From Podarcis bocagei (Eukaryota), in NCBI GenBank assembly GCA_964188305.1, contig OZ076885.1: 64,000 bases of DNA, one strand, 5' to 3'. Shown here in pieces: positions 11,946 to 53,921 of the stretch. Numbering within the stretch: position 1 is the stretch's first letter; each line of letters starts with the position of its first letter. The translations under genes were made by a program, and so were the position numbers. Under the pieces are notes generated by a model. That model made no database searches. It worked only from the letters and a program-made list of their open reading frames with translations, and was not told the origin of the DNA.

Positions 11946-14168
11946 TATAATGATTTGTGTTTATCATGTCCTTCTCTTGACATATTAGGATGCTTCTGTA
12001 TTTATGAAAAAATAGTGAATCCTAGATCTTCAAACACTCCAGAATTTAGGGATTTTATGAAGTACTTCATGTGGCATTTGTTACAGTACATAATTGTATA
12101 GAATTCATTGTGCTTCCCCGAAGAACAAATGATCCATGTTACTCATCAATCTGTTTTATGTTTAGTGAACAGCATACATAAAAGTCTTTGGGGGTTTCCT
12201 AAGAGGTTTCTTTTTGACAGCACATAAAATTAATATTGTTTGGTCATGGTATTAACCTTGACCTTAAATTCAGCATACTTAATCCTGTGATTAATGTTAT
12301 GATTAAGCTAAACAGCAAATTCTGGAAGCTTAAATATTTGTGAATTCAAGCATGAAATAAAATTCTAATAACCACTACAATGATGTGGATATATGAATTG
12401 TGTTGCTTGCTAAAGATAACCTGGAACTGGTGTCTCATAAAGTAATTTGTCAATAGGCAGTCTTCTTTTTGCAGCAGACTCTTCCCTGGTCTACCTTTCT
12501 ATCTGATGCTCCAAAATCATGGAGCATTATTTCTTCAGGCATCCTCTCAGAGATTGATGGAAGATTCTTTCTCAACACAATTTGATCTTTAAATCAATCA
12601 TCATAATTTTCAACTAGAGTTCTAGACATGCATATTCTGCAATAAGGAATGCAGTAGTTTCAGTAAGGAATGAGAACAGTACTAAAAAAGAGAATTGGGT
12701 TTTTGGGGAGTGGATAGCTTAGTAATTCACCATAGGTGGGAGCTATTTTTCTCCAATGACTTCTGACGAGGAGATTCTGCTTAAAATGTGCAGTTATTCC
12801 TCAGTATGTAGCATGGTGCTGCTTCACAGAAACAGTGAAGTACCTCTGCTGCAAGACAAAATTATAAAGTTGCCTGTGAAGAAGCTTGCTTGGTAATAGT
12901 GTGCCATTGGTTAAATTCTGATTGCTGATGACAGTTAAATCCTACCATCCCTCTGGCTGTTCTTTCTATCAGAATTAGGCAATAGAGATTCTGACATGGT
13001 CAGAAGCATTTCTTTAGTCATCTATTTATTCCACACACACACACACACCCGTATAGAATAGTGCTAACAAAAAGCAGATTATATAAGGCTATCTCTTTAT
13101 GGATTAAATTCTGAGCTATAGCCTACTTTAAATCACAGAGTGTTAGTCCTGTCCTAGGACTAACAGCAGTTTGGGGAGGGGGGGTGTTTTTCAGCACAAT
13201 GGTGCAGGAGGAAAGTGTTGACCATGGACACGGTGGAATCCTAATCAGACCTCCTTGCACTTTCCATTTCTATTTTAACAACAATAACAAAACATTAATG
13301 AAAGTAATGAACAAACCATGGTAGAGTTAGGGGCAATTTGGCACATGGACTCAAACTCTTTTGACTGGCAAGTTATCAACTCCTCTGCTAGCACCGAAGA
13401 TTTTGGTGAGTGGCAAAGGTTTTGGCCTTTTTTTGGTAGTGAATCATTTTTAAGTGTTATAGGTTCCTTATCACTGGAACACTCATTTTTGGACTGTAGA
13501 AAAGTATTTGCTGTTATGCATCCCACGTGTTTTTGGATGCCAATGTGCATTGGGATTAGTACCACCAGGAAATCCATTATGATAGGAGAATGGATTCATG
13601 GCATCCTGTGTTCTCATATATTCATTGTTGTTGGCATCCGTCCGTCTCGAGAGACAATGTAAGGGAAGTGTTGCCTTCTGTGGATATCAGTGTTCCTTCT
13701 ACTAAATAAATAAAGTCTTAATGTCACAGTTTTTTATTTATTATTGACTCGTATTGTGCTTTATTCTTGCATAATGATTTAAACACATTTTTCTCCATGT
13801 GCCAGCTGTCCTGTTGTGCTGAGCACTCCAATTTTCTCATAGCAACTTCTTCAGGGTTATTTCATACAATACGTATATGATATGTTGAAGATTTGATCAG
13901 TTAATGAAAGAGAGCCAGTTTATTGAAGAGGCCAAAGATAGGACTTTTAATAGCCAATCTGTTTTCGTCGTCTTTTGAAAATGCTATTGCTGTTGCTACG
14001 ATATCTTCAAAGAAGTGCCTCTTTTTTGGTTTGTCGCCTGCTGACCTTGTGCTGTTTTGTTATGGCTACCAGCAAATGAGAATGGGATCACATCAAGGAT
14101 ATAGTTGAATGAACATCTTGCTTGATGCATCTGAAGCTGTGCCTAACAAAAGATCCCTATATCTGCAG

Positions 14169-27427: not shown

Positions 27428-28387
27428 CTCTAGCTTCTATCAGCCCCAGCTAGCATGACCACTGGTCAGTGATTATGGGAGTTGTAGTCCAAAACATCTG
27501 CAGGGCACTAGGTTGGGGAAGGCTGCCTTGGGGCGTTCTCCAAATTGCCCTCCATTCTTAGTAGAAAGGCTTCGTGTTGTCCCATTATTGCCCAGAGGGC
27601 ATGGCCATCGTCCATAATACAACACAAGTATTCAGTGAAGTAAATGCAGCAAGTACTACTCTGTGCAATTAAAGTTTTGTAATTTCTAGCTCTTCATAAG
27701 AGGTAGCTGCTGAGAGCCAGATGAGGTAATCTTAACCTTTTGTGCTTATATGTTGTCATTTTATTGGGTAAATGGCTAGTTGAAATGCAGTTGTAACAAA
27801 CTGAATTATAATGGCATGTTAACAGCCAAAGGCAGCTGTGTTAGCATGTAAGCAAGAAGTTTCAAAATCCGGTTGGCCAGCAACTTTATTGGACCTATCA
27901 AAACATTGCAAATTTGTTGCAAGCTTTTGAGTTGTCCCGACGAGATGTTACATAAAGCAGGAGATGAGGGTTTTTCTTTGTTTGTTTTTAGTACAGAAAG
28001 GTTAGGCTAGATATTGTAGCATGTTTGCAGATGGATCTTGGAGGCTGGGTAAATCTCTCCTTGGTGCTACAAATACCAGGTTTTACACCTAGCATTCTAG
28101 AATAAAGAATCAATAGCTTGCAACCCAGATATGTACTTTAGTTACTGAAAGCGGGATTTCAGCTAGTCACAACATCAAGAGTTTGGGTTGAGGAAAAGAA
28201 TTAACTGGATTTGCGTTGTTTAAAAGTTCAATTTTGTGCGCACACAAAAGTAAAAAGAGTTGTTTCTGCAAGAAGCCATCTCTGTTCTCCTACCTTCCAA
28301 AAGAGCTATCATCTATACCAAGCAGTGTCTGTAAATCACAGAGAAGGTACTTTAATGCTAGCTTCTGAGTCCGGCTTGTTTGGAAGC

Positions 28388-28795
28388 TGTGAGGGTTTGA
28401 TTAGCTGCTTGTGCGTGAAAACGTGCTCCCTCAGAGTTTGTGCGCCCCCACAAACCTCCGTGTGTGACGGAGCTCCTCAGACATGTCTGCTCTAGTCACT
28501 AGTAGAGTCCGACAGTGGCTGTCTGCGGAAGCGTTTCCAACAAAGAAGTTCCTTAACGGAAACGCGTCTCCTGGACTCACGGCGTGACAGTTTCCTGCGA
28601 GGTATGGGTCTCCCTATGGGAGACTCCGATACCTCCCCACTGTTTTCGCTGGAAGCCTCCCTGAGCCCTCCCTCCTGCTCGCATTCCCTCAGAGACCCAC
28701 TCCTCCCCCTGCTGGTCCCTGCTTCAGCAGTTGAGTCTCTTTCATCCTGCCTGAGTCCCTCCACCACCTGATGCTCTGATGGCAGTTCCCTGACA
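28388..28795 (-). repeat. 3' LTR (408 bp)
   Basis: Direct repeat of 33450-33857, adjacent to the PPT. Confidence 0.97.
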
Positions 28796-31700
28796 TCCAC
28801 CTCCCCTCCAGGGCCCCCCTCACCCCCTCCCAATTCCTCCCCCCTGGGAGGTGAAGGGCTAAAACCCCGAAACGAATCTTCCTCATCTTCTGACGTCTCG
28901 AACAATTCTCTCCATCGATCGTCGTCCTGGCCAGCTGAATCCTCCTCCTCTTCAGAATCTGGGAACCCCTCCAACTCCTCTTCCTCGTCGGTGGTGGCAA
29001 AGTATTCCCTTCGGAACCTCGCTACAGGCTGAGGTTTACGTGGGAACCTCTGATGAAAAGTCTCTATTAAAACCTCGTCATTGACATCCTCTGCCCTAAC
29101 CCAGGTGTTTTCCGACTCCGGTTCCCCTTCCCACATTACCAAATACTCTACTTGATCTCCCTTCCACCTGGAATCGAGGATCTCCGCTACATGGTAGCTG
29201 TGTTCCTTCTCCTCCATTGCTGGTCCCCTAGTGACCCTCCCCTCACTGTCTCCTCTATACGGTGACAGCAACGACCTGTGAAAAACTGGGTGCAGCTTCA
29301 TGTGGTTCGGTAACCGGAGCCTGAAAGCCACTGGATTGACCTGCTGTATGACTTCAAACGGACCCAGCCTTTTGGGTCTTAATTTCTTACAACCTCCTTT
29401 GAATGGCAACCCTTGGGTTGACAGCCACACCTGGTCCCCCACCCTGATGCTTTCACCTTCCCTTCTGTTTTTGTCTGCTTGCCTCTTATATTCCTCCTTA
29501 GCCCTGTTTAAGTTGAGTTGGAGCTGGCGATGGATCGCTTCCATTTCTTCCACGAACTGTTCTGCAGCTGGAACGCTCCAGTTCTCCCCCTCCCCCCCTG
29601 GGAAGGCTCTGGGATGGCACCCGTGATTAGCCAAAAAGGGGCTCATCCCCGTGGACACGTTCTCTGCATTGTTGTAGGCAAATTCTGCCAACGCCAGCTT
29701 CTCCACCCAATCATTCTCTCTGTCATTAACATAACACCTCAAATATTGTTGGAGAACCCCATTTGCTCTTTCCGCCTGCCCGTTGGTTTCAGGATGACGG
29801 GCCGTCGAGAAATTAACCTCTACATGCAGTAAGCTCATGAGCTTCCTCCAGAACCTGGAAGTAAATTGTTTCCCTCGGTCTGAAACCACCCTCAAGGGGG
29901 CGCCATGCAACCTAAACACATTCTCTACAAACAATTTGGCGGTTTCTTCTGCTGTAACCGCATGTGAGCAGGCTATGAAGTGGGCCATTTTAGTTAACAG
30001 GTCTACTACAACCATGATGGCTGTTTTCCCTCTAGACCTTGGCAGATCAGTCATGAAATCTATTGCCACTGCTTCCCACGGTCTCTCAGGTGTGGGCAGT
30101 GGTTCTAATAAACCAGCCGGCGCCTGCCTCTCCCCCTTGGCTCTTTGGCATTGTTCACACCCTCTCACATACTCCCGCACATCTTCCCTGACCTTGGGCC
30201 ACCAAAATTCCCTGGTAACCAGCCACATGGTTTTGTGTTGCCCAAAGTGCCCTGCTGTGGGGCTATCGTGCAGCTGCTTGAGTACTTTCTCCCTCAATTC
30301 CCCTTCAGGTATATATAACGCTCCCTTATAATACAATGCCCCATTTCTCTCCTCAAAACCACCGGGTTTGTCTTCCTCCCCTCTGAGATCCCTGAGTTTC
30401 CCCTGGGCGTATGCATCCTGCACCGTACCCTCTACCAATTCCCTTTGCCCCACCAAAGTCGCCCCACACACCCAGCGGTCCTCTGGAATGATATGGGTTT
30501 CTTCGGGTGCTCCCTCCCCCTCCAAATATTCAGGCTTGCGTGAGAGAGCGTCCGCCCTAACATTCTCTGGGCCTGGCACATAACAAATCTCAAAGTTAAA
30601 TTTGGAGAACTCTTGGGCCCATCTCAACTGCCTTTGGTTGAGCACTCGCGCCGTTCTCCAGTACTCTAGATTTTTATGGTCCGTGCACACTTGCACTTTA
30701 TGTTGTGCACCAACTAGCAGATGCCTCCATCTCCGGAACGCCTCATGAATAGCAAGCAGTTCTCGGTCGTACACCGTGTAGTTCCTCTCGGATTTGTTCA
30801 GCTTCCGCGAGAAGAAGGCACACGGACGCCACTCCGACTCCTCCTTCCCCGGCTGCAGAAGAAGCACCGCCCCTATGGCTCTGTCAGATGCGTCTGTTTC
30901 AACCCTTAGCTTCTTTCGTAAATCCACATGCAGAAGTTGTTCTTCAGAGGCGAAGGCCCTTTTCAGTTCCTCAAACGCTCGCCCCGCCTCCGCCGTCCAT
31001 ACAAACTTCTTCTTACTGCTGAGACAGTCAGTGATGGGCGCCGTCAGATGGGCGAAGTTGCGGATGAACTTACGATAAAAGTTTCCAAACCCTAGGAACC
31101 TCTGCACATCCTTCTTGGTTTTGGGTGTTTTCCATTCCAGCACTGCCTGTACCTTGCCGGGATCCATGGCCAATCCCTTGTCTGACAGGCGGTACCCCAG
31201 GAATTCCACCTCCTTGGTATGGAACCGACACTTCTCCAGTTTGACCCACAGCCTGTTGGCTTGCAGTCTGCTCAACACTTCTCTGACGTCTCTCACATGT
31301 TGCTCCTCACTCTCAGAATACACCAACACATCATCTAGAAAGGCAACGCAATTCTTGTAGAGCAAAGGGCCCAGCACGTGGTTCATAAAAGATTGAAAAC
31401 ACGCGGAGCCTGCTTGTAATCCAAATGGCATAACGAGGTATTCAAACGCCCCCAAAGGGGTAAACATGGTGGTTTTCCATTCATCCCCTTTCCTTATGCG
31501 TATCAGGTTGTACGCCCCCCTTAGATCCAGCTTTGTGAAAATCTTTCCCTTCCTCACCATGGTCAAAATATCATCAATTCTGGGCATAGGGAACGCCACC
31601 GGTTCAGTCACTGCATTCAGCCGTCTAAAATCACATACAAGTCTCGGCTTGTCCGCATTTTTTTTGTCCACAAAGAACACTGGGCTCCCCCCTGCTGCTT

Positions 31701-32445
31701 TGGACTCTCTGATGAAGCCTCTCTTCAGGTTCTTGTCAATGAACCCTCGCAACTCCTGCATTTCCCTGTCTGACATGGCATACAACTTGCCCACGGGAAG
31801 CTGTGCTCCAGGGAGTAAATTGATCTGACAATCAAAGGGTCTATGAGGTGGTAGTTGGTCAGCTTCCTTCTCGCTGAACACGTCGCTGAGATCTGCATAC
31901 TGTGGTGGTACCTTCACCTTTCCCATTACTTCAGTCCCTGCTAGGGTGGCTTGGGCCCCTACTGAACCCTTCTCCCCTTTGCAGTGTTCTAGGCAATGTG
32001 CTGAACCAAAGGACACCACTCTTTGATGCCAGCCAACCAGCGGATCATGTAGAGCTAGCCAGCTCATTCCCAAAATAATGGGAGCGCCTCCCAGGGTGGC
32101 CACATTAAACGCTATCAGTTCTGTGTGCCTTGCCACCCTCATTATCATTGGGACAGTCTGCAAGCGGACTCCTCCTCCCAACAACTCCCTGCCATCAATC
32201 GTGGTCACCTGCAGGGGGTTGCTTAAAGGGATGGTCTGTATCTGGTGTTCAGCAACAAACTCCTTGCTCATAAAATTGCAGGAGCTGCCTGAGTCCAATA
32301 GCGCCTTTATTTTTAGGGGGTGCCCATTCTGCAGCTCTAGCGACACTTCAATCACTAGAGCAGGTCGAGGAGCTTCTGGCACGGGCACTTTCACTGCTCT
32401 TTGGCCTGGCTGCAGTGCCCCAATTGTGGCAACCAGGCGTTGGCT
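28492..32445 (-). CDS. pol: Pol (PR-RT-RNase H-integrase-chromodomain-acidic/basic tail), expressed as Gag-Pol by -1 frameshift
   Basis: Protease LLDSGS; RT LDLRGAY...FLDD; RNase H TDAS/TDH/ADALSR; integrase HHCC, D,D,E and GPF motifs; chromodomain ~29041-29196; frame open 32478-28492. Confidence 0.96.
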   Translation of the reverse strand, partial: SQRLVATIGALQPGQRAVKVPVPEAPRPALVIEVSLELQNGHPLKIKALLDSGSSCNFMSKEFVAEHQIQTIPLSNPLQVTTIDGRELLGGGVRLQTVPMIMRVARHTELIAFNVATLGGAPIILGMSWLALHDPLVGWHQRVVSFGSAHCLEHCKGEKGSVGAQATLAGTEVMGKVKVPPQYADLSDVFSEKEADQLPPHRPFDCQINLLPGAQLPVGKLYAMSDREMQELRGFIDKNLKRGFIRESKAAGGSPVFFVDKKNADKPRLVCDFRRLNAVTEPVAFPMPRIDDILTMVRKGKIFTKLDLRGAYNLIRIRKGDEWKTTMFTPLGAFEYLVMPFGLQAGSACFQSFMNHVLGPLLYKNCVAFLDDVLVYSESEEQHVRDVREVLSRLQANRLWVKLEKCRFHTKEVEFLGYRLSDKGLAMDPGKVQAVLEWKTPKTKKDVQRFLGFGNFYRKFIRNFAHLTAPITDCLSSKKKFVWTAEAGRAFEELKRAFASEEQLLHVDLRKKLRVETDASDRAIGAVLLLQPGKEESEWRPCAFFSRKLNKSERNYTVYDRELLAIHEAFRRWRHLLVGAQHKVQVCTDHKNLEYWRTARVLNQRQLRWAQEFSKFNFEICYVPGPENVRADALSRKPEYLEGEGAPEETHIIPEDRWVCGATLVGQRELVEGTVQDAYAQGKLRDLRGEEDKPGGFEERNGALYYKGALYIPEGELREKVLKQLHDSPTAGHFGQHKTMWLVTREFWWPKVREDVREYVRGCEQCQRAKGERQAPAGLLEPLPTPERPWEAVAIDFMTDLPRSRGKTAIMVVVDLLTKMAHFIACSHAVTAEETAKLFVENVFRLHGAPLRVVSDRGKQFTSRFWRKLMSLLHVEVNFSTARHPETNGQAERANGVLQQYLRCYVNDRENDWVEKLALAEFAYNNAENVSTGMSPFLANHGCHPRAFPGGEGENWSVPAAEQFVEEMEAIHRQLQLNLNRAKEEYKRQADKNRREGESIRVGDQVWLSTQGLPFKGGCKKLRPKRLGPFEVIQQVNPVAFRLRLPNHMKLHPVFHRSLLSPYRGDSEGRVTRGPAMEEKEHSYHVAEILDSRWKGDQVEYLVMWEGEPESENTWVRAEDVNDEVLIETFHQRFPRKPQPVARFRREYFATTDEEEELEGFPDSEEEEDSAGQDDDRWRELFETSEDEEDSFRGFSPSPPRGEELGGGEGGPGGEVDVRELPSEHQVVEGLRQDERDSTAEAGTSRGRSGSLRECEQEGGLREASSENSGEVSESPIGRPIPRRKLSRRESRRRVSVKELLCWKRFRRQPLSDSTSD
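28796..28809 (-). promoter_or_regulatory. Polypurine tract GGAGGGGAGGTGGA
   Basis: Purine-rich run directly 5' of the 3' LTR TG. Confidence 0.85.
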
Positions 32446-32451
32446 TTTACC
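32383..32451 (-). promoter_or_regulatory. -1 ribosomal frameshift signal: G_GUA_AAA, 6-nt spacer, H-type pseudoknot
   Basis: S1 GCCUGGUUGC/GCAGCCAGGC (10 bp, one GU); S2 GGGCACU/AGUGCCC (7 bp); pol is in the -1 frame. Confidence 0.8.
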
Positions 32452-33404
32452 TGCTCCGCTCCCCCTTCTTCTCCCCCCTCAACAGCTCCCACCATCCCTT
32501 GCCATTCCTTCCTCTGGGGGCAGACTCTGGCAAAGTGGCCTGGCTGTTGGCAGAGATAGCATTTCCGGGGGCCCTTTCCCTCCTTCTTAGCTCCCTCGCT
32601 GGTTTTTGAAAATGCGCGCGCGCGCGCTGTTCCGATTTCCATCGGCTCTGCCGGCGGGAAAGCTGGCTCAGGAATGTCTGGAATGCGGAACTCCTTCCAA
32701 CGTTCCCCTCTCCCTTCCCGCCTCTCCAAGGCTCTTGCCTCCTGCCGCGCTCCTATGGTCAGCGCAGATTTGGTCAGCTGATCCATAGACTCCGCCCTGG
32801 GGCTCCGTGCCAGCTCGTCTTTCACCCCCGAAGAAAGACCTTCTTCAAATAGCATTTGAACGGGTGCCGCCGATAAATCCCAACTCAGTCTGTGAATCAG
32901 CATGGTAAACTCAGTCCAATATTCACGGACAGATCGACTCCCCTGCTTACAAGCCATTAGCTGCCTGCGCACCACCCCTTCCTCAATATCGCTGGAAAAC
33001 ATGATATCCATTGCACGAAAGAACTTCATTGTGTCCTTTAGTATGTCATTGTGCGTTGCCATTAGGGGTCGCACCCAGTCTCTAGCCCCTTTCTCAAGAT
33101 GCCCAATTACAAAAGCAACTCGCGATTCCTCATCAGGGAACTCATCGAACTGCACATTAAGGGCATATTGCATCTCTGTCCTAAAAGCATGGTAGTCCTT
33201 GGGGTCCCCCCCAAATTTCTGCACCAATCCTGGTACCTTTCTGGGGAATTGAGTGGCTCTCCCCTTCTTGTCTGCATCCTGAGCCCTTCTCTCCTCCAGC
33301 CTCGCCGTCTGCAGGGCCAGTTGAACCTCCAACGCTCGGTATCTATCTTCCAAGCTTGGACCAGCTCCAGCCCCTGCTCCTCCGGTTCCGGTTGGTTCGC
33401 TCAT
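32391..33404 (-). CDS. gag: Gag (retrotransposon capsid-like domain plus CCHC zinc knuckle CYLCQQPGHFARVC)
   Basis: First in-frame ATG at 33404 (A at -3). The ORF track extends to a non-ATG start at 33515 inside the LTR. MHR-like KQGSRSVREYWTEF. Confidence 0.92.
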   Translation of the reverse strand: MSEPTGTGGAGAGAGPSLEDRYRALEVQLALQTARLEERRAQDADKKGRATQFPRKVPGLVQKFGGDPKDYHAFRTEMQYALNVQFDEFPDEESRVAFVIGHLEKGARDWVRPLMATHNDILKDTMKFFRAMDIMFSSDIEEGVVRRQLMACKQGSRSVREYWTEFTMLIHRLSWDLSAAPVQMLFEEGLSSGVKDELARSPRAESMDQLTKSALTIGARQEARALERREGRGERWKEFRIPDIPEPAFPPAEPMEIGTARARAFSKTSEGAKKEGKGPRKCYLCQQPGHFARVCPQRKEWQGMVGAVEGGEEGGAEQVKANAWLPQLGHCSQAKEQ

Positions 33405-33436
33405 GATGCCTTCTCTTGCACAGGCAGCGTACAAAG

Positions 33437-33447
33437 ACTGTCGGACT
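33437..33447 (-). promoter_or_regulatory. Self-priming primer-binding site AGTCCGACAGT
   Basis: Starts 2 nt inside the 5' LTR end, has no TGG, and is the exact complement of LTR ACTGTCGGACT (33578-33568). Confidence 0.88.
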
Positions 33448-33449
33448 GC

Positions 33450-33857
33450 TGTGAGGGTTTGATTAGCTGCTTGTGCGTGAAAACGTGCTCCCTCAGAGTT
33501 TGTGCGCCCCCACAAACCTCCGTGTGTGACGGAGCTCCTCAGACATGTCTGCTCTAGTCACTAGTAGAGTCCGACAGTGGCTGTCTGCGGAAGCGTTTCC
33601 AACAAAGAAGTTCCTTAACGGAAACGCGTCTCCTGGACTCACGGCGTGACAGTTTCCTGCGAGGTATGGGTCTCCCTATGGGAGACTCCGATACCTCCCC
33701 ACTGTTTTCGCTGGAAGCCTCCCTGAGCCCTCCCTCCTGCTCGCATTCCCTCAGAGACCCACTCCTCCCCCTGCTGGTCCCTGCTTCAGCAGTTGAGTCT
33801 CTTTCATCCTGCCTGAGTCCCTCCACCACCTGATGCTCTGATGGCAGTTCCCTGACA
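33450..33857 (-). repeat. 5' LTR (408 bp)
   Basis: TGTCAGGG...CCCTCACA in element sense; no differences from the other LTR found by eye. Confidence 0.97.
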
Positions 33858-36800
33858 GAAGCCATTAGCCATACTCCCTTATTCAGACCAAAGGAGAGAT
33901 TATCTGGTTTGTTTCACCATTCAAGTGAAGGGAGAGGCAAAGGAGATGCATATCAACTGTATATATGCTGGCTTATTTGACCAGGATTTTATCATGCACA
34001 CGCAGCCACAGATGTCATAGAGTGGATGCTACCCTGTTTTAAACTATTAGAGGACACTCAGTCAATCAGGTACATCTCCCTTTTATGCCATTAACCTATG
34101 ACTAAAAGCTGCTTCTTAGATTAGAATGCCTAGGCATCCTGGGAAATTGTTGAATAAATCCCAAAAATAAATGGGTGGATATATGGTGTATACCAGTTTC
34201 CCTGAACCTGGTGCCCTCTCGCAGGGTGCCGTCTTGAACTATAACTCCCATCGGTGATGCTAGAAGTTGTTGGGGGAAGGCTGCTTTACAGTGTTGCATT
34301 TAGAATATTAAGGAAGCCACAGCCAATTCAAGCTGTCATACATGCATGTATGCAGTGGTGTACAGATGCAAATAGAAGCTTTTAACATGATGTCGTACAT
34401 GGTGTGTATGTGCACATGTACATTATCTAGTGCTAAAGCAGCTCTAATAATTTCTTTGTGTAATTAAAATATTGTTCCTTAAGGAAAAACTAGTGTACGC
34501 GATTATCTTAAGCTGTTGCTCAGTTCTTTACAGAAACATGCCAGACTGAGGATTTAAGAGTACAAATTTAGGAGTACAGGTGTCATTTCAATTTTCAGGG
34601 GTTTCACAAATATTTTGAGTTTTGTGGGGCATCTTAGTTCTGGCTAGCAGCAGAAAACCGTGAGAGCTCTTCATAATTCATAGTACAGACCTTGGACATG
34701 TAGTTTCTTCATCCATACTGTAGTAATTTCCTGGGATTTCCCAGTGATTTAAAGCCACAGTGTACAAACTTCCTCAGTGAAAGCATTTCTCATTATACTT
34801 CCCATAGGGATAAATCTGCTAGGTTAAGCCCACTTCAAGAAGGCGCCATGGCAGAAGAAAAGAGACACAGAGAGAATGAACGAATGCCTAGTGGCCCCTT
34901 TGCCAGCCTATTTTGTCTGCCCGTTACAAAGCCTGAAGGCCTATCAAGACTTTTTCTCTGTGTGGCAGCTGTCTGTTCATTTCATTTGTTTAGCAGCATC
35001 TTGAGGTTTTGATTGTCCTATATTTGCCCATGGTTCTTGAGCAGAAAAATTATTTTCTTATTATTTAAGTGGTAGTTGTGCTGCCTTCATTGTGACTTTG
35101 AAGAAAAATCATTAACTTTTTCATCCTCGTTTACGAACACTCAAGGTTTTTACTCGTGCTCCTTGTGCTAGAGAACACATTTTAGCAGCATTGGAAACTG
35201 TTGATTCATTTTCAGCTTTTGTGATTATGCATTCTGTTCTATTATCAGTACTAGGAGACTTTTAAAAGCCTCAATAAAAAAATGAGTATAATTAATCAGT
35301 GTATTTCCCAATGTGATTAGTAGTATATCAGAAGAACAGCCTGTCAGATAGACTTGGGTCTTGTACTCAAAAAGATGTATCAGATTTATTTTCAGATTTT
35401 TCTTTTAGTTTATTTTTCCCCAGCCCCCTCCCTTTCTTCCTTGGTTCCTTCCTTTCCTCCCTGTCAATTTGCCTGCCATATCCAGCATATTCGTATCCGT
35501 TGTTAAATGCCCCATCTGTAAAATAGCTATTTCGAGAAATGTCAGTTAATGTCTCCTTGCATATTAACATTCACTATGGAAAAGATAATATATTATCTTA
35601 ACCAGTATAGTGTTTGCCCTCTCACTTCCCTGGTCTACCCACTATAGACAGATCTGAAATGAATACGGAATCCTTCTTCAATCCTTAGATCTTTGCTTTT
35701 CCTGGGGGATGAAAATATTCTAGTGCCGCTTGTTCTGTGTTACCCATCTTCCTAGCCTAATTAAAGACCATCTGGAGGATGCATGCTTGTAAGGGTAAGG
35801 GCAGTGACAGCAACCTCCTGATCATTACACCTCTCCAGGTTCCCAGCTGTTAAATGAACAGTTGTAACATGCAGGCAAAATGGATAATAGGTGGATAGAA
35901 CTTGCTGCAGAATGTGAACAGTGTGTGGCATTGGTGGACAGTAGAGAAGAAATGGTATTTGTTTGTATTCAGTAGAATAGAGCTTCTTCCTCAAACATTT
36001 GGGATTGCAGGCTCATCTTCTCCAGTTTACTAATGATATACACACACAAGCTCATCAGGCATCCTACCTCTCCAAATTTGGGGGAACGGAGCTGCTGATT
36101 TATACCAAATAGCTTTTTATATATAGTGGGAAAGGGTGTTGGTACTCACCATGAAGTTATTACAGTAAGTGTTTCACTTTTAACTGAGGTGGGGTGGAGG
36201 TGCTGGTACTATGTGCCATGGAGTAGTCCTAGAAAAAAGTTATGCAAATTGTTAATAGCCATGTAACAAGTGGCAACCGGCCACAAAATGTTACAGTGTG
36301 CTGTGGTTTTACTCAGAGTTCCAGCCAATCCATTCCATTGCTCCTTCCACTGGCCTGGTTTTCCTCAGTTAGTATCCATCAGTTAATATTCTGTCCCCAC
36401 TGAGAGTGCTCTGCACTCAGTGGCTTGTTTTGTCACAAGGGTTCTCCATTTAGGGATGTTTTTAGGGGGTGAAGTAGATAGCTTTACACTACATTAAAAC
36501 CCTTGATTTCTCCATATGGGTGTCTCCCATTTCCATTCCTAAAGGCAGTTGGGTTTTGGTCCGTCCCCCCCAGCATCTGCAAACATCCCGGTTACCTCAA
36601 GTCTGCATGGGTGGTGCTGCTTTGCCTACACCTTCAGAAGCATAGGCAGATAAATTAGAGATGCAGGGAATAAAGATGATCTTTTCAACCTATTGAATTT
36701 GAATCATACTCTCCAAAGTTTGTCCTGCTGTACACAGTGCTTGTTCCTTGCTTAACATATGTTTGCAAATAAAGAGTCAATCTCTTAAATCTGCAAATAA

Positions 36801-47024: not shown

Positions 47025-48193
47025 GTTTAGCCAAAGGAGAGAAGACCAAGGGGGCAGGATAGCACTCATATAGATGTCTAAGGAGTAGCCATGTAGCTCT
47101 TGGTTTCCTGCATCAGGCTGGGGTTAGACAAAATGGTCTATAAGACCAGGTACTTCTACGCAACTTTCTTTCAGGTGACTTTTTGCAGACCACTCACACT
47201 CCCTTCTTTCATCTCTTATGCTAAACAGCCTTTCCACACAGCTTTCCAAGTAGTTTGAGCTGGACTCGCTGTTGTAGACTAAGTACACATTCCTGCAAAC
47301 TTTGCTGCCACCTGCCGTTGGTCTTTGGAAGTCTAGTGCTGTTTGAAGAATATGCTTATTCAAGAATGCCACCCTGCTCAGCTACTCTATGCAAGACATT
47401 TTAAGCCATTTGTGTAGTAATCATTGTGTGCCACAAGTTCAAGCAAAGTATTTGCTAATTCCCCAAAGACATATGCCAGGATCTCATGGTGGTTCTGTTA
47501 CTCTGTGATGGGCCTAGAATGTCTTGAGGTCTGTGAATTGTGGTTGTGGATGAAGTGGACTTCAGTCAAAGCTTAGGACTTGGTGATATGTGTTACTAAG
47601 AAAGTGGGTGAAAATACATTCTCCCAATAATGGAAAGACAGTGTGCCTTGCTCCACCTTTTTTTCACTGCACTTTTGGCTGTAAAGAAATCTAAAAATAT
47701 GATGTTCCCTTCTTCCTTTCCCTCCCTTGCCCACTACAAAAATATTGGAAATAGAGTGCTTTATAAAACTTGTTTTTAATTTAGAGAAGGTTTTATTTTA
47801 GGAAAAGGGTTTCATCATTTTCACTTTCGCCCGTTATAGAAAGGTTATCAGGTTTGCAGTATATTTTCATGGCTCTTTCAGGAGAGTGGCATGTTGCAAA
47901 AGCAAGCACCTTTTGCAGTCATCAGATATAGGGCAGGAAGCTGCCTTACTTTGTGAGTTAGATGTCCAGGCTGACCCTCCTGTTATGTCACAGGCAGCCT
48001 CCCCAAACCACCTGTACTTGTGTCAATAATAAATACAAAAGAATCGATCCATGCAACATTGCATAAAAGAATACAAGTAAGCTAACGTAATTTTACAGTT
48101 TAAAACTAATCAGGAAAGTGAATAATGTCTAACATTAAATGTAGCAGAGAAAATGAATTAAAAACTAATGTTATGAGTGTTTCTATTTTACAG

Positions 48194-48340
48194 CTCTTTG
48201 TTGGTCTTGGTTTTCCATATGAGGGACCTGCCCCTCTAGAGGCTATTGCAAATGGATGTGCATTTCTGAATCCAAAATTTAATCCACCCAAAAGCAGCAA
48301 AAACACAGATTTCTTCAAAGGCAAGCCAACACTCCGAGAG
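48194..48340 (+). CDS. MGAT5: MGAT5 coding exon 12 (LFVGLGFPYEGPAPLEAIANG...KPTLRE)
   Basis: acag|CTC...GAG|gtaagc, 147 bp. Confidence 0.97.
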
Positions 48341-50457
48341 GTAAGCAATCAACATCCATATTCACAATTTTCTATTGAGTGTACTGCTGGTTGGACATGT
48401 CAACAGTAGCTTTTGTAGCACATCCTTTTTTAAATTTTCAAGCATCACCAAAGTATGGGATTTCATTGCTATTAACATAGCAAACTCTTGGTCTGGGATT
48501 GTTTCCTTCTGAGCCTATATCCTGCAATTACTTTTAGACATTTGTATCTAGAATAGTATCAGTGCTCAATTCTTTCAATTGGTTCAGTTTACACAGAAAA
48601 TCCCCATTGCTAAAAACAAAAATCAATGTATGAAAATCTTAAGAGTGTAATTCTAAGCAGGCCACAGGTGTTGTTTTTTTGTGTGAGGTGGTTTGCACAT
48701 TTATTTAGCTTTATGTACACAAAATGCAAGGAAGTTAAACTCTGTCCAATTTCCAGCAAGGGGGAAAAACAAAAAACAAACCACTTGAATTATTTTGCTA
48801 GACTTTAGGGGCAAGGTCCTTCTCTGTGTTGGGTGATGGAGGTCTACAGTGAACTTTTACTTGCAGCCACACATTTCAAGGTTCCTGATCAGGACTCTAC
48901 TCAAATTCAAACACAGAGATAGATAGGGGGTGAGGTGGATGTGGATATTATGCCAGGGCTTGTATGTACACCCTTCTCCCTTCCCATAGATAATGGAGTT
49001 CACATGTTCACTCCCGAGCATACTTCTTGTTACTTGGAAATAACAGCTTGTTCCTCAATATTTATAATGTTTTACAGTCATCACCACCTGAATCGTGTAT
49101 GCTGACAGCACATAGCCTATTAAAAGAGTATAAATAAAATTCTATGATATTTGTATTTAAATCAATATAAAGAATATTTGTTTGCCTGTTTTAGTTCCTG
49201 GAAAGGGCAGTCAGAGGGGGGCATTAACTTAATAAAAGGGATAAACATAGCATGGGGGGAATCAATTCTTTTCATAAACTGTTTGAGTGGCAATGGCCTC
49301 TTTCTTGTAAAAGAAACATTTGCTTTACAAGGTGCTTTCACTCTGTACAGGCAGCAAATATAAGCTGATAAGGATTTGTCCTCAAAATATGTCTCGACAA
49401 CAAGAATTGGCTTTGTAAATATGGCATTCAGAAAGTAAAGCAAGGGAGATTAGGATTGAAGGCTCCTCATTTATCTACACGTGTTAGCTGCCTTTTAGCC
49501 TTCACTGGGCAGGAAGCAAGGTCTTGCTTGCCAGCCTTTAGCTAACATTAAGAGTGGAGTATTTTGGGCATAATGCCCAGCACTATAACTCTGTAGCATT
49601 AATTCTGAAGGCTTTTAGAAGAATGAGGCTATCTAGAAGTACAGGAGGTGACTCGTGGACTACAGACTCATGGGCTACCAAGGGGCTGGGACATGTGCAT
49701 GTCAGTGCTTTACATGACCTCATATGCATCTCTGCCAAATGCATAATATCAGGCAAGGAAGTGGCTGCAGGAGAAAGCCAATTCAGGTGGGAACAGTTCC
49801 TTAAGAAGTAAACAGCTGCCTATAATATTTTGAAGCAAGGTAAAAGGGGGTTATGGAAAGAGTGGGTGCAGAATGTTTTGGAACACCATGAAGGTAAAAT
49901 ATGAAAAAAGAGATGGCTTATATAGCATGTGCTCTGAATTTGTTTTTTTAAGCTGTATTAAGTTTTTCAAAACGTTAAGTAAACAAGCTACAAAAAGTGT
50001 GTCATTGCAGATGGCAACTCACAAATTAAGTAATCTTATCGAGTCTTCCAGCTTTGACACAAATGGAAATGACTGAGCATACAATTCTCATATAAATACT
50101 AATTAGCTTGGCAAGAGATACTAGAGAGGTCAGAATTTAGTATCAGAATGTTAGGATACTTTATTGCAAGATACACTAAACTGTCTGCTTCCCTTTTTCA
50201 AGGTGCATTGCACTGTCCCTGACTCTTATATAATTACTTGCCCCACATTTCAATGATTAGGTTCTATAGAAATCTTGATAGATAATTCCTTTTTGGTGAA
50301 TATGATGAGGTGAGCAAAGCTTTGAAAACAAAGGAATAAAGAGCCCCCTAAATGGCTGGAGTGTTATGTTATCTACACATTTTGCATCTTATTGAAATTT
50401 GCCTACTGAAATGAATATGATTCCCGGAAAGATGACATGTGATTGTTTTTCTTTCAG

Positions 50458-50574
50458 TTGACATCTCAACACCCCTATGCTGAAGTTTACATCGGGAAGC
50501 CTCATGTTTGGACTGTAAACATCAATGACCTCTCTGAAGTTGAGAAGGCAGTGAAAGCAATTTTGAATCAAAAG
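50458..50574 (+). CDS. MGAT5: MGAT5 coding exon 13 (LTSQHPYAEV...AILNQK)
   Basis: tcag|TTG...AAG|gttaac, 117 bp. Confidence 0.96.
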
Positions 50575-51335
50575 GTTAACAGTTTTGTGTGTTGTTGTTG
50601 TTGTTTTAAAAAACCCACTGCATTTGTAAATCAATGCATAAATATGGAACAGAAACATATGATAGTGTGAGGTTTATCAGAAAGAGCTCAATATGAAACT
50701 AAAAGCCTTAAATAATCCAACAAAAATAAAACTTTCTATGTTTTCTGGCTACGATGAATTACAGCTTGTTGCAAACTCACATGGATCATTATATGAGATC
50801 CATTAATATGCAAAACATATATATTGTAAATACCATGCAATATGCAAAATATGAATATTATTTCAAAAGATAGAAGATTTATATCCTGTTAAGAGCTTGA
50901 AACCGGGAGAGGGGCACTCAGCTTATAACTCCCCACCCCTGCCCATCCAATATAGCTGGAATGTCATATTTGAATATATGTATAGATTATACTTTGTTAA
51001 AGCAGATGCTATTTTACTATGTATCCTGCGCAAATGAGAAGCCTCAGTGGGGGGGGGGGATTACAGATCGAAAAAGCACAAAATTATTTCTCTGGTAGCT
51101 GAGAGCTTTAATGGTAGGGGAAAATGGGCTAGGAAATACTACAGGTGTGAAAGTTGCTGAGTGTTTTTATAGTTTAATTTCATGGTAGCAGCAATATTTA
51201 GAATGGCAGATGCCTTACTAAACAACTTCATAACTAATACCTGAGCACCTGCACAAACATATGTTACAGTGGTGCCTTGGATAATATTTTTTAAAACAAC
51301 AACAAGGAACTAAACTGCACATTTTATTTTAACAG

Positions 51336-52265: not shown

Positions 52266-52423
52266 GATTTCTGCCATGGGCAAGTGATGTGGCCCCCATT
52301 AAGTGCCCTTCAGGTTAAAATTGCTGGGTCTGGGAAATCATGTAAGCAGGTTTGTCAAGAAAATCAGCTCATCTGTGAGCCATCCTTTTTCCAGCACCTG
52401 AACAAGGACAAAGACCTCTTGAA
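52266..52423 (+). CDS. MGAT5: MGAT5 coding exon 15 (DFCHGQVMWPP...KDKDLLK)
   Basis: tcag|GAT...GAA|gtaagt, 158 bp. Confidence 0.97.
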
Positions 52424-53921
52424 GTAAGTACTGCAGTCAAAGAAAGTTGCAAGTAAACATTATCAGCACATTTTGAATGTCGCTCTGGAACACAGTTTCA
52501 ATCTCAGCACAAGATAAACTTCAGAGGCTTTTGAATATAATGCATTTGTGTTCATGCATCTATACACCTGCATAGCACCATTTAATAGACAGAGAAAACT
52601 GAACCAAATGATGCCGTGCATGTTGCTAACCAAACAGAATTTACCATAGCTTTCCTTTGTATTGCAACCAATTCCCTGGCTTCTGCCTATGTTGACCTAC
52701 AAGTTACAATTGATGTTTAGATCTACTTTCAAATACTTTCCCCTAGACTGGTGTATGCAGGTATTGGCGGAAAAGAAACCCCATAACTCCCTATATGCTC
52801 TCACGTGTGACAATATCACACATGTATGTTAGCTTACATCTATGATTGCTGAAAACTGTCTGCTAAATCATGGTTTGTTGGGGTATATGCCCCCAGTAAA
52901 CTTGTCACATGGGACGGTTATTGTATGAAGTGAGTTAACTGTTGTATTAGTATGGAAGATTTCCATTGTACGTGTGTGTGTCTGTTCTAATAGTAGCATT
53001 GCTAGAATCATGTTTGTGACTGTGCATCTGCCACTGTTTTTTGTTCAATCATCATCATTAAAATAGTTACCAGCTTCTAGCTTTACTCTACACTTCTGCA
53101 TATACAGGTGGGTTTGCTGGATGAATTTGAAAAGTGTAAACTGGCCCATAGGCTTGGGGAATGTCCTATATAAGACAGTCACTATTTTCCAGAGCAGAGT
53201 GTGCCACAGTGCCCAGGCAACATAATTCCCAATCACTCATTCTCACCATCACCACATGATTACCATTGCATGAGAAGTGCAAACAATGAGTGATTTCTGC
53301 ACACTCCATCACTGTTCCTGCAGTTCACTGCTTATTGGAAACATGCTGGACTGAAGCAGACTTGCCACATGATTTAGAACTTCCAGGGTTTCCAATTGTG
53401 CAGAGAGCCTACTTGACTAGAACAAGCAGTGTGCTGTAGAGGATGGATTGGGGAAGTGGTGGGGGGGCAGTGGGTTCATCCCTACTTTTCTTTTTATGGA
53501 AGGGAAGGGGGGATATAATGAATGAATAGGCCTATAGTAGAACTGCATTGTACAGATCTCATACATTCTAGTTATCCACTTCAACTGTGAACTCTATGCA
53601 ACGTCATGTCAAAGAGAACTCTGGATTATAGTATTTCTGCTCATCGGTGTTTGTGTAACCAAGCGTCCTGGGATGGTGTCAATCTCTTCTAAGTGAGGTT
53701 CTGCCTTCTTGTAACACCCTTTTGAAATCATCGGTGTGATTTTTGACGTTGTGAGTTGGGCAGCTTACGAGACCTGATTGCTGAGAAGTCAGTTTTATGT
53801 ATGAACTGAATCTCTGCATTACCTACCTTTGGAACCATGAGTTGGAAGTGCTGCTGCTGCTGCTGCTTGCTGAATTATTGCAGGTGATATAGGTTGTCTT
53901 ACTTTTCCTTTTCTTTTCCAG

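What the first reader, a model, noticed from the sequence alone, without database searches (positions are those of the whole stretch)
48341..48452. MGAT5 intron 12 begins with an in-frame, in-register degenerate copy of exon 13
Seen: reading through the exon 12 donor gives VSNQHPYSQFSIECTAGWT; exon 13 reads LTSQHPYAEVYIGKPHVWT. That is 7/19 identical residues and, by hand count, 33/57 identical nt, with no gaps and zero offset. Differences within the identical residues are at third codon positions. One extra nt extends the match (TGTCAACA vs TGTAAACA). A donor-like AAA|GTATGG lies 112 nt in; exon 13 is 117 nt. Inference: a fossil of exon duplication, of mRNA/cDNA-templated conversion, or a selected truncated read-through isoform ending ...WTCQQ*.
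Basis: partly seen in the sequence, partly recalled or inferred. Interest (0 to 1): 0.75.

Follow-up and report, generated by a model that had tools for sequence, protein, structure and literature searches.

The report
Decayed exon-13 copy starting MGAT5 intron
Directly behind the splice donor of one exon of a lizard's MGAT5 gene, the intron carries an old, decayed, untranslated copy of the first half of the next exon, aligned letter for letter with it. It is most likely a scar of DNA repair copied from the gene's own spliced RNA, an evolutionary curiosity and not a working isoform.

Summary
Intron 12 (48341-50457) matches exon 13 (50458-50574) at 33 of the first 57 letters, with no gap and no offset. 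With one 1-letter gap the match reaches exon letter 64 (40/64). This is the best non-self hit of either sequence in the whole window. P is about 1.5e-7 for the fixed register. It lies far outside 251 pseudo-donor controls and 67 read-through ORFs of other species.

The first 8 letters (GTAAGCAA, the donor) are not exon-like. Beyond intron letter 66 nothing is similar, and the donor-like GT at 48453 is not part of the copy.

The copy shows no sign of coding. Differences fall 8/7/9 over the codon positions, and a related contig (L005) stops after 5 codons. RNA of a sister species shows only the normal 48340>50458 splice. No reads lie in the intron start and none use 48453.

The second half of the copy is shared with L005, a distant tetrapod contig that lost 22 letters, so the copy is old. 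That block is better kept than the intron 11 flank.

Best reading: a real, old, non-coding fossil. It was most likely copied from the spliced transcript during repair of a break just inside the intron, which would explain the zero offset and the spared donor. That mechanism is inferred. A DNA-level exon duplication followed by a deletion remains a rival.

The parts
48194..48340 (+).
   Evidence: Translation. It matches residues of human GnT-V (MGAT5) structures at E about 6e-28. Spliced reads end at 48340.
48341..48348 (+). Donor and first 8 intron letters (GTAAGCAA). Not exon-like: 2 of 8 match exon 13 nt 1-8.
   Evidence: This is the donor used in all RNA data (joint 48340>50458).
48349..48405 (+). 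Decayed in-register copy of exon 13 nt 9-64 (50466-50521). About 62% identical, with one extra letter at 48397.
   Evidence: 30/48 identical over nt 10-57, then 7/8 after a 1-nt gap. Reciprocal best hit in the window. P 1.5e-7 for the fixed register.
48407..48409 (+). TAG that ends the read-through frame, 22 codons after exon 12
   Evidence: ORF 48125..48409.
48367..48424 (+). Block alignable with the intron 12 start of the distant contig L005 (41/57). It covers the second half of the copy and 18 nt beyond it.
   Evidence: z 6.8-6.9; the intron 11 flank of the same contigs gives z 0.3. At the 27 sites where the two species agree, 20 match exon 13.
48453..48458 (+). No evidence of use, and not part of the copy.
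   Evidence: No joint and zero depth in 48402-48485 in four RNA data sets. Intron nt 66-125 against exon nt 65-129 gives p 0.49.
48586..48700 (+). Possible second, weaker exon-13-like stretch (exon nt 27-117 plus intron 13 nt 1-25). Not significant after allowing for post-hoc choice.
   Evidence: Direct repeats D2 and D5 at spacing 1898/1906. Global score 9.5 against a null of 2.9 +/- 1.75, p 0.009 before correction. A local test was not significant.
50458..50574 (+). MGAT5 exon 13, the source of the copy (39 codons)
   Evidence: Conserved in L001, L006, L009 and L013. Spliced reads begin at 50458.

Best explanation
Letters 9-65 of MGAT5 intron 12 are a real, old, neutrally decaying DNA copy of letters 9-64 of exon 13. 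The copy sits directly behind an intact donor and in exact register with the exon. Today it is plain intron: it is removed with the rest of intron 12 and encodes nothing.

The most economical origin is a single repair event. This part is inferred, not shown.
1. A break occurred a few letters inside the intron.
2. The broken end stayed paired through exon 12 with the gene's own spliced transcript, or a cDNA of it. On that template exon 12 is followed directly by exon 13.
3. About 56 letters of exon 13 were copied in.
4. The end was rejoined to the rest of the intron.

Pairing through exon 12 fixes the zero offset. Only alleles that kept the first intron letters, and so the donor, could survive, which explains why letters 1-8 are not exon-like.

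The event predates the split from the lineage of contig L005, which keeps the second half of the copy and has lost 22 letters of the first half.
For: Real copy: 33/57 ungapped at zero offset, 40/64 with one gap, reciprocal best hit in 128 kb of search space, and P 1.5e-7 from a model that fits the empirical tail. It lies far outside 251 pseudo-donor controls and 67 orthologous or paralogous read-through ORFs.

Not an assembly slip: independent runs of the same and sister species hold 67-100% of the sampled words of the stretch.

Non-coding: codon-position differences are 8/7/9. L005 has a stop after 5 codons. The only joint seen in RNA is the canonical one, and depth is zero in 48402-48485.

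Old: JC distance is 0.52 over nt 10-57. L005 shares the second half at 22/37 identity to exon 13, and 20 of the 27 sites where the two species agree match the exon.

Transcript template: zero offset, a donor-bearing first 8 nt that is unlike the exon (2/8), an abrupt end at exon nt 64, and no acceptor or intron-13 sequence attached. Patches of reverse-transcribed, sometimes spliced, RNA at repaired breaks are documented in human genomes (PMC5110952).
Against: The mechanism rests on geometry alone. No relative with an empty site was found, and the junctions are too decayed to read microhomology.

The mismatches are 5 transitions to 13 transversions. That ratio looks like random mismatch more than ordinary decay.

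Standard homology tools do not see the pair at all (blastn, nhmmer). Its significance depends on the register being fixed in advance, and the scan has looked at many junctions.

The block shared with L005 is better conserved (about 72%) than the unalignable intron 11 flank, with an exon 12 dS of about 1. That hints at constraint, not pure neutral decay.

Several weak extra exon-13-like pieces in this and other lineages would fit a DNA-level duplication better.
Confidence: 0.55

Rival explanations
1. It is a remnant of a DNA-level duplication of exon 13. The old exon stayed close behind exon 12, where exon 13 sits in species with a 77-118 nt intron 12, and decayed. A downstream duplicate took over. 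One or more later deletions happened to bring a remnant into register with the donor.
For: Intron 12 is only 77-118 nt in L006, L009 and L013 but 2.1-3.9 kb in the window and L001.

There are extra exon-13-like stretches near the 5' end of the intron:
- L011 nt 97-215, preceded by CAG (p 0.001).
- L005 nt 46-84, a ppt/AG-like stretch followed by exon nt 3-27 at 25 matches in 29 alignment columns (p 0.02-0.03).
- Window 48586-48700, running into intron-13-like sequence (p 0.009 post hoc).
- Window intron nt 13-34 resembling nt 79-99 (p 0.03).
Against: Each extra piece is weak once the number of places tried is counted. The L001 orthologue of the L011 piece shows nothing.

The one robust copy has no acceptor, no flanking intron sequence and only 56 of 117 letters.

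Zero offset would need a deletion exactly as long as the old intron, roughly a 1-in-100 coincidence. Several events are needed instead of one.
Confidence: 0.2
2. The 5' end of intron 12 is a conserved regulatory element, and selection keeps its likeness to exon 13. Candidates are a splicing enhancer, a decoy for factors that bind the start of exon 13, or a rarely used poison micro-exon at 48417-48452.
For: Window nt 27-84 aligns with L005 at z 6.9, while the intron 11 flank of the same contigs does not align (z 0.3) and exon 12 dS is about 1. An AG...GTA unit lines up in both species: TTTTGTAG|...|GTATGG in the window and TTTGAAAG|...|GTACTG in L005.
Against: Only two species are compared, and the dS comes from about 35 synonymous sites. 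L005 has lost the best-matching 22 letters (the QHPY part). No RNA joint or depth is seen at 48402-48485. The RNA fold of the region is less stable than its shuffles (z +1.8). L001 and L011 align only weakly (p 0.04-0.14).
Confidence: 0.12
3. It is chance resemblance, picked out because the reader happened to translate through this donor.
For: blastn and nhmmer give it no significant score. The mismatches are transversion-rich, as in random pairs (5 ts: 13 tv). The window also holds other improbable short likenesses to exon 13: 20/23 at 13476 and 25/39 at both 52419 and 21295. The scan has read very many junctions.
Against: P is 1.5e-7 for the fixed pair, from a model that fits the observed tail. 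The gapped 7/8 extension adds about 2.5e-3 more. It is the reciprocal best hit in the window, far outside 251 pseudo-donor controls and 67 cross-species controls. Even with 1e5-1e6 junctions and free choice of length, fewer than about 0.1 such cases are expected.
Confidence: 0.07
4. It is a selected truncated isoform, made by reading through the exon 12 donor and ending ...WTCQQ*.
For: The frame stays open for 22 codons, and 7 of the first 19 residues equal exon 13.
Against: There is no codon-position bias (8/7/9). The frame is closed after 5 codons in L005. No read-through reads appear, against 11 spliced reads and 2 spliced transcript contigs. A protein cut here would lose the rest of the GnT-V catalytic domain. 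The PDB constructs matched run well beyond these residues.
Confidence: 0.02

Closest known systems
Class 2 templated sequence insertions: patches of reverse-transcribed RNA used to repair a double-strand break (Onozawa et al.; review PMC5110952). Related: transcript-RNA-templated break repair in yeast, cited in that review as Storici 2007.
   Same: A short stretch (tens to hundreds of nt) of transcribed sequence, sometimes spliced, is copied into a break. It has no poly(A) and no target-site duplication, and it stays as a heritable scar.
   Different: Known patches come from distant loci and land at unrelated places. Here the template would be the gene's own spliced transcript, held in register by the adjoining exon. 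The patch therefore lies at zero offset behind its own donor, like an intron loss that stopped half way. RNA origin is inferred from geometry and not shown, because the copy does not contain the exon-exon junction itself.
Intron creation by tandem duplication of an exon segment holding AGGT (Rogers model; Hellsten et al. 2011, PMC3265369; potato RdRp case, PMC4974935)
   Same: New introns of that kind begin with sequence recognisably similar to the following exon, in register. That is exactly the pattern seen here.
   Different: This intron is ancient. It sits at the same place in every vertebrate MGAT5 and MGAT5B read-through ORF found. The mature junction is GAG|TTG, not AG|GT. The 3' end of the intron does not resemble the end of exon 12 (12/57).
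Pseudo-exons left by tandem exon duplication (fossils of mutually exclusive exons)
   Same: A decayed copy of a neighbouring exon lies in the flanking intron of the same gene.
   Different: Such fossils keep their own acceptor and donor flanks and lie inside the intron at arbitrary offsets. This copy begins 8 nt after the upstream donor, has no acceptor, and covers only half of the exon.
cDNA-mediated (reverse-transcriptase) intron loss
   Same: It would use the same template, a spliced transcript paired through the upstream exon, and the same register.
   Different: Intron loss removes the intron precisely. Here the intron and its donor are kept, and only about 56 nt of the next exon were written into it.

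Membership tests
Intron born by tandem duplication of an AGGT-containing exon segment | The 5' part of the intron is an in-register copy of the downstream exon | tested here: met
   33/57 ungapped at zero offset, P 1.5e-7.
Intron born by tandem duplication of an AGGT-containing exon segment | The 3' end of the intron is an in-register copy of the end of the upstream exon | tested here: not met
   The last 57 nt of intron 12 against the last 57 nt of exon 12 give 12/57, which is chance level.
Intron born by tandem duplication of an AGGT-containing exon segment | The intron is young: absent at this position in close relatives or paralogues | tested here: not met
   Read-through ORFs of many vertebrate MGAT5 (…KPTLRE|V…) and MGAT5B (…KPTSRE|V…) genes show a donor at the same codon. 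Only invertebrate-like ORFs have the two exons fused.
Intron born by tandem duplication of an AGGT-containing exon segment | The spliced junction reads AG|GT | tested here: not met
   The junction is GAG|TTG. The loose ends of spliced reads read TTGACATCTCAACA.
Class 2 templated sequence insertion (RNA/cDNA patch at a repaired break) | The inserted stretch is templated by transcribed sequence found elsewhere in the genome | tested here: met
   The source is exon 13 nt 9-64, 2.1 kb downstream.
Class 2 templated sequence insertion (RNA/cDNA patch at a repaired break) | No poly(A) tail and no target-site duplication | tested here: inconclusive
   No A-run and no direct repeat is visible at the ends of the copy. 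At 38% decay, short duplications could no longer be seen.
Class 2 templated sequence insertion (RNA/cDNA patch at a repaired break) | An empty site exists in relatives that lack the insertion | tested here: inconclusive
   L005 carries part of the copy. L001 and L011 align too weakly to tell (p 0.04-0.14). Fish-like and mammal-like contigs have unrelated intron starts. No lacertid or other identified squamate was within reach.
Class 2 templated sequence insertion (RNA/cDNA patch at a repaired break) | RNA origin is shown by an exon-exon junction inside the insert | tested here: inconclusive
   The register implies the exon 12/13 junction, but intron nt 1-8 are the donor and not exon 13 nt 1-8 (2/8 identical).
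Pseudo-exon from tandem exon duplication | The copy keeps the flanking acceptor or donor and intron sequence of the parent exon | tested here: not met
   The copy starts 8 nt behind the exon 12 donor. Nothing resembling the exon 13 acceptor precedes it. Intron nt 66-125 against exon nt 65-117 plus the start of intron 13 is at chance (p 0.49).
Pseudo-exon from tandem exon duplication | The copy spans the whole exon | tested here: not met
   Only exon nt 9-64 of 117 are covered.
Translated read-through / intron-retention isoform | The open frame is conserved in relatives, with excess change at third codon positions | tested here: not met
   L005 has a stop after 5 codons. Differences are 8/7/9 by codon position.
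Translated read-through / intron-retention isoform | RNA reads run across the donor into the intron | tested here: not met
   Depth is zero in 48402-48485 in two raw RNA-seq runs and two transcript assemblies of a sister species. 11 reads and 2 contigs show the canonical joint. The low depth limits this to isoforms above roughly 10%.

The most novel reading that the evidence does not exclude
It is a heritable footprint of spliced-transcript-templated break repair in a vertebrate germ line, an intron loss that stopped half way. The broken intron end, held in register through exon 12 on the gene's own mRNA or cDNA, copied 56 letters of the next exon into the intron while sparing the donor. If so, in-register exon echoes at intron starts would be a searchable signature of RNA-templated repair in natural genomes.
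Probability: 0.3. Interest if true: 0.6.

Novelty: new variant of a known kind. Interest (0 to 1): 0.38.

Why it matters
Natural traces of repair templated by a gene's own spliced RNA are normally invisible. The repair either restores the sequence or removes the whole intron. A partial event that writes the next exon into the intron, in register, while keeping the donor would be a rare readable footprint. It would also give a simple genome-wide search rule: compare each intron start with the start of the next exon.

If instead the block is constrained, as the comparison with L005 hints, it would mark an unrecognised splicing element in a glycosyltransferase gene of medical interest.

As it stands, it has no shown effect on the gene product.

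Tried and rejected
- blastn-short of the first 400 nt of the intron, of exon 12, of exon 13 with 200 nt, and of the last 300 nt of the intron against the window found no pair beyond noise. It did not even report the copy.
- nhmmer with a 5-species exon 13 profile found no intronic copy in the window or in any locus.
- The copy does not continue to the exon's end and the GT at 48453 (p 0.49).
- The intron 3' end does not match the exon 12 end (12/57).
- TRF found no tandem repeat in 48300-48800.
- The RNA fold of 48320-48460 is less stable than its shuffles (z +1.8). The inverted repeats were short and unremarkable.
- A multiple alignment of the supposed second copies from three lineages with exon 13 was unconvincing, at about 50% identity with many gaps.
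- The mammal-like contigs L014 and L015 were fetched because one read-through ORF shared 4/19 residues. That turned out to be a TG-rich simple sequence (22/57 and 12/57).
- No lacertid or identified squamate orthologue could be fetched. The protein index holds no ORF with the window's read-through, so the phylogenetic spread is known only from the unnamed contigs L001, L005 and L010-L012.
Exons were searched one by one.
- P0001, which I take to be primate or human because of its 111 contigs, was not looked up and no contig of it was fetched.

Full report
WHAT IS THERE. The window carries part of the MGAT5 (GnT-V) gene on the + strand. Related ORFs carry Pfam PF15024. Intron 12 is 48341-50457 (2117 nt, GT..AG) and exon 13 is 50458-50574 (117 nt). 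Earlier notes of this scan call the genome a wall lizard, Podarcis. I did not verify that.

CHECK OF THE OBSERVATION.
- The read-through peptide and the exon 13 peptide share 7/19 residues.
- The DNA shares 33/57 letters, ungapped, at zero offset.
- A one-letter shift adds 7/8 more, giving 40/64 in all.
- A GT lies 112 nt into the intron, at 48453.

The match is far beyond chance for a pre-set register:
- Among all 127,888 positions of the window on both strands, the intron start is the best non-self match of exon 13 nt 1-57 (33; the next best is 30). Exon 13 is likewise the best match of the intron start (33; next 29-30).
- A Poisson-binomial model reproduces the observed tail (545 expected vs 561 seen at >=24; 12 vs 11 at >=28). 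It gives P=1.5e-7 for the pair and 0.02 expected anywhere in the window.
- In a left-anchored gapped alignment the pair scores +10. The 251 GTRAG pseudo-donors of the window and of L001 have mean -10.6, sd 3.8 and maximum -0.5.
- As a cross-species control, 67 read-through ORFs of other MGAT5 and MGAT5B genes share 0-2 of 19 residues with exon 13. One shares 4, caused by a TG-rich simple sequence.

Independent runs of the same species and of five sister species hold 67-100% of the sampled words of 48194-50574, so it is not an assembly slip.

LIMITS OF THE COPY. Intron letters 1-8 (GTAAGCAA) are the donor and match exon 13 at only 2 of 8. The likeness runs from letter 9 to letter 65, which is exon nt 9-64. 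Beyond that, intron nt 66-125 against exon nt 65-117 plus the start of intron 13 is at chance (p 0.49). The donor-like GT at 48453 is therefore not a copied exon 13 donor. The last 57 nt of the intron do not resemble the end of exon 12 (12/57).

NOT CODING, NOT EXPRESSED AS SUCH.
- Differences between copy and exon fall 8/7/9 on codon positions 1/2/3.
- The remark that identical residues differ only at third positions is true by construction and says nothing about selection.
- The nearest alignable relative, L005, has a stop after five read-through codons.
- I laid two raw RNA-seq runs and two transcript assemblies of a sister species (about 1% diverged) on 48150-50650. The only joint is 48340>50458, seen in 8 and 3 reads and in two contigs of depth 24 and 60.
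- Reads that overhang 48340 continue with the exon 13 letters.
- Depth is zero in 48402-48485 in all four data sets, and nothing starts, ends or splices at 48453.
- Depth is low, so an isoform below about 10% is not excluded.

OTHER SPECIES. The word search with the read-through ORF returned 115 ORF fragments. I fetched DNA for the ones that mattered.
- The "LFVGLS"-type contigs, which I take to be fish (L006, L009, L013), have a tiny intron 12 of 77-118 nt, unrelated to the exon (in-register 11-14/57).
- The mammal-like contigs L014 and L015 give 22/57 (TG-rich simple sequence) and 12/57.
- L001 and L010-L012 are two related non-mammalian tetrapod species with a 3.9-kb intron. They give 11-18/57.
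- Invertebrate-like ORFs have exons 12 and 13 fused. All vertebrate MGAT5 and MGAT5B ORFs show a donor at this codon, so the intron itself is ancient.

L005 has an exon 12 protein identical to the window's, and its exon 12 DNA differs at 19 of 147 sites, all synonymous. It is the informative contig. Its intron nt 6-61 align with window intron nt 27-84 at 41/57 (z 6.8-6.9), and it lacks window nt 6-27. Read through that alignment, L005 is 22/37 identical to exon 13 over the second half of the copy, against 23/37 for the window. Of the 27 sites where the two species agree, 20 match the exon.

The copy is therefore older than the split of these two lineages, and L005 lost its first 22 letters. 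That fits a JC distance of 0.52 between copy and exon.

Oddly, the intron 11 flank of the same two contigs does not align at all (z 0.3), and exon 12 dS is about 1, though that is a noisy figure from about 35 sites. The start of intron 12 thus looks better kept than neutral sequence. I cannot explain this with two species.

WEAK EXTRAS. Several further exon-13-like stretches lie near the 5' end of intron 12:
- L011 nt 97-215, preceded by CAG (p 0.001). Its L001 orthologue shows nothing.
- L005 nt 46-84, a ppt/AG-like stretch plus exon nt 3-27 at 25 matches in 29 alignment columns (p 0.02-0.03).
- Window 48586-48700, against exon nt 27-117 plus intron 13 nt 1-25 (p 0.009, chosen post hoc; not significant).
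- Window nt 13-34 against nt 79-99 (p 0.03).

None stands alone. Together they keep a DNA-level duplication of exon 13 alive as a rival.

HOW IT MOST LIKELY AROSE. Four facts must be explained at once: zero offset, an intact donor in letters 1-8 that is not exon-like, an abrupt end after 56 letters, and no acceptor or intron 13 sequence attached.

One event can do this. A break occurs a few letters into the intron. The 3' end stays paired through exon 12 with the spliced transcript or its cDNA, where exon 13 follows exon 12 directly. Synthesis copies some 56 letters, and the end is then rejoined to the intron. Exon 12 pairing sets the register. Alleles that lost the donor would have been removed by selection.

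This is the template and geometry of reverse-transcriptase-mediated intron loss, stopped half way. It also belongs with the RNA-derived patches found at repaired breaks in human genomes (PMC5110952). All of this is inference from anatomy.

A tandem duplication that created the intron (Rogers model; Hellsten 2011, PMC3265369) predicts the same in-register 5' likeness. It fails three other defining features: the intron is ancient, the junction is not AG|GT, and the intron's 3' end is unlike exon 12.

A duplicated exon followed by a deletion exactly as long as the old short intron needs several events and a roughly 1-in-100 coincidence.

Chance is unlikely but not excluded. Standard tools (blastn, nhmmer) give the pair no score. 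The mismatches are transversion-rich (5:13). The scan has read many junctions.

VERDICT. The feature is a real, old, non-coding, in-register partial copy of exon 13 at the very start of intron 12. The read-through isoform is not supported. Transcript-templated repair is the preferred origin and is not proven. Exon duplication plus deletion, or a constrained splicing element, are the live rivals. It is of moderate interest as a possible natural footprint of RNA-templated repair, and there is no evidence that it changes the gene product.

HOUSEKEEPING. P0001, which I take to be primate or human, was not looked up.

Noticed in passing
window 28000-34000: A G+C-rich block (50-54% against about 40% around it) with strongly negative GC skew. 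Earlier first-reader notes place an LTR retroelement here (PBS/LTR at 33437-33578; pol reading into the LTR at 28492-28810).
   Followed up: no
window 52409-52458: The last 15 nt of the exon ending ...KDKDLL(K) plus the first 34 nt of its intron resemble exon 13 nt 65-115 (37/50 with one gap; 25/39 ungapped). A second place, 21295, also reaches 25/39, so this is probably A/G-rich chance. It is a second exon-13 likeness that straddles a donor.
   Followed up: partly
window 13476-13498: A 23-nt stretch in an upstream MGAT5 intron matches exon 13 nt 37-60 at 20/23 and does not extend. By my rough estimate about 0.04 such hits are expected per window.
   Followed up: partly
L006:3235-3311, L009:733-850, L013:1309-1412: In the 'LFVGLS'-type contigs, which I take to be fish, MGAT5 intron 12 is only 77-118 nt long, against 2.1 kb in the window and 3.9 kb in L001. 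The intron expanded in the tetrapod-like lineages.
   Followed up: partly
P0029, P0030, P0034-P0038, P0043, P0050 (proteins): ORFs on long genomic contigs read ...KPTLR(x)LTSQ(N/H)PY... without interruption. Exons 12 and 13 are fused in these, presumably invertebrate, MGAT5 relatives, so intron 12 is not universal in animals.
   Followed up: no
window 50583-50605: A (TGT/GTT)n simple repeat begins 9 nt after the exon 13 donor. The reads tool skipped reads there as repeat.
   Followed up: no
window 48244: All RNA reads and contigs of the sister species (organism E) read C where the window has T. This is a fixed or common difference inside exon 12.
   Followed up: no
L001:2593-2804: L001 carries about 210 nt, 95 nt into intron 12, that its relative L011 lacks. 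This is an indel that shifts everything downstream.
   Followed up: partly
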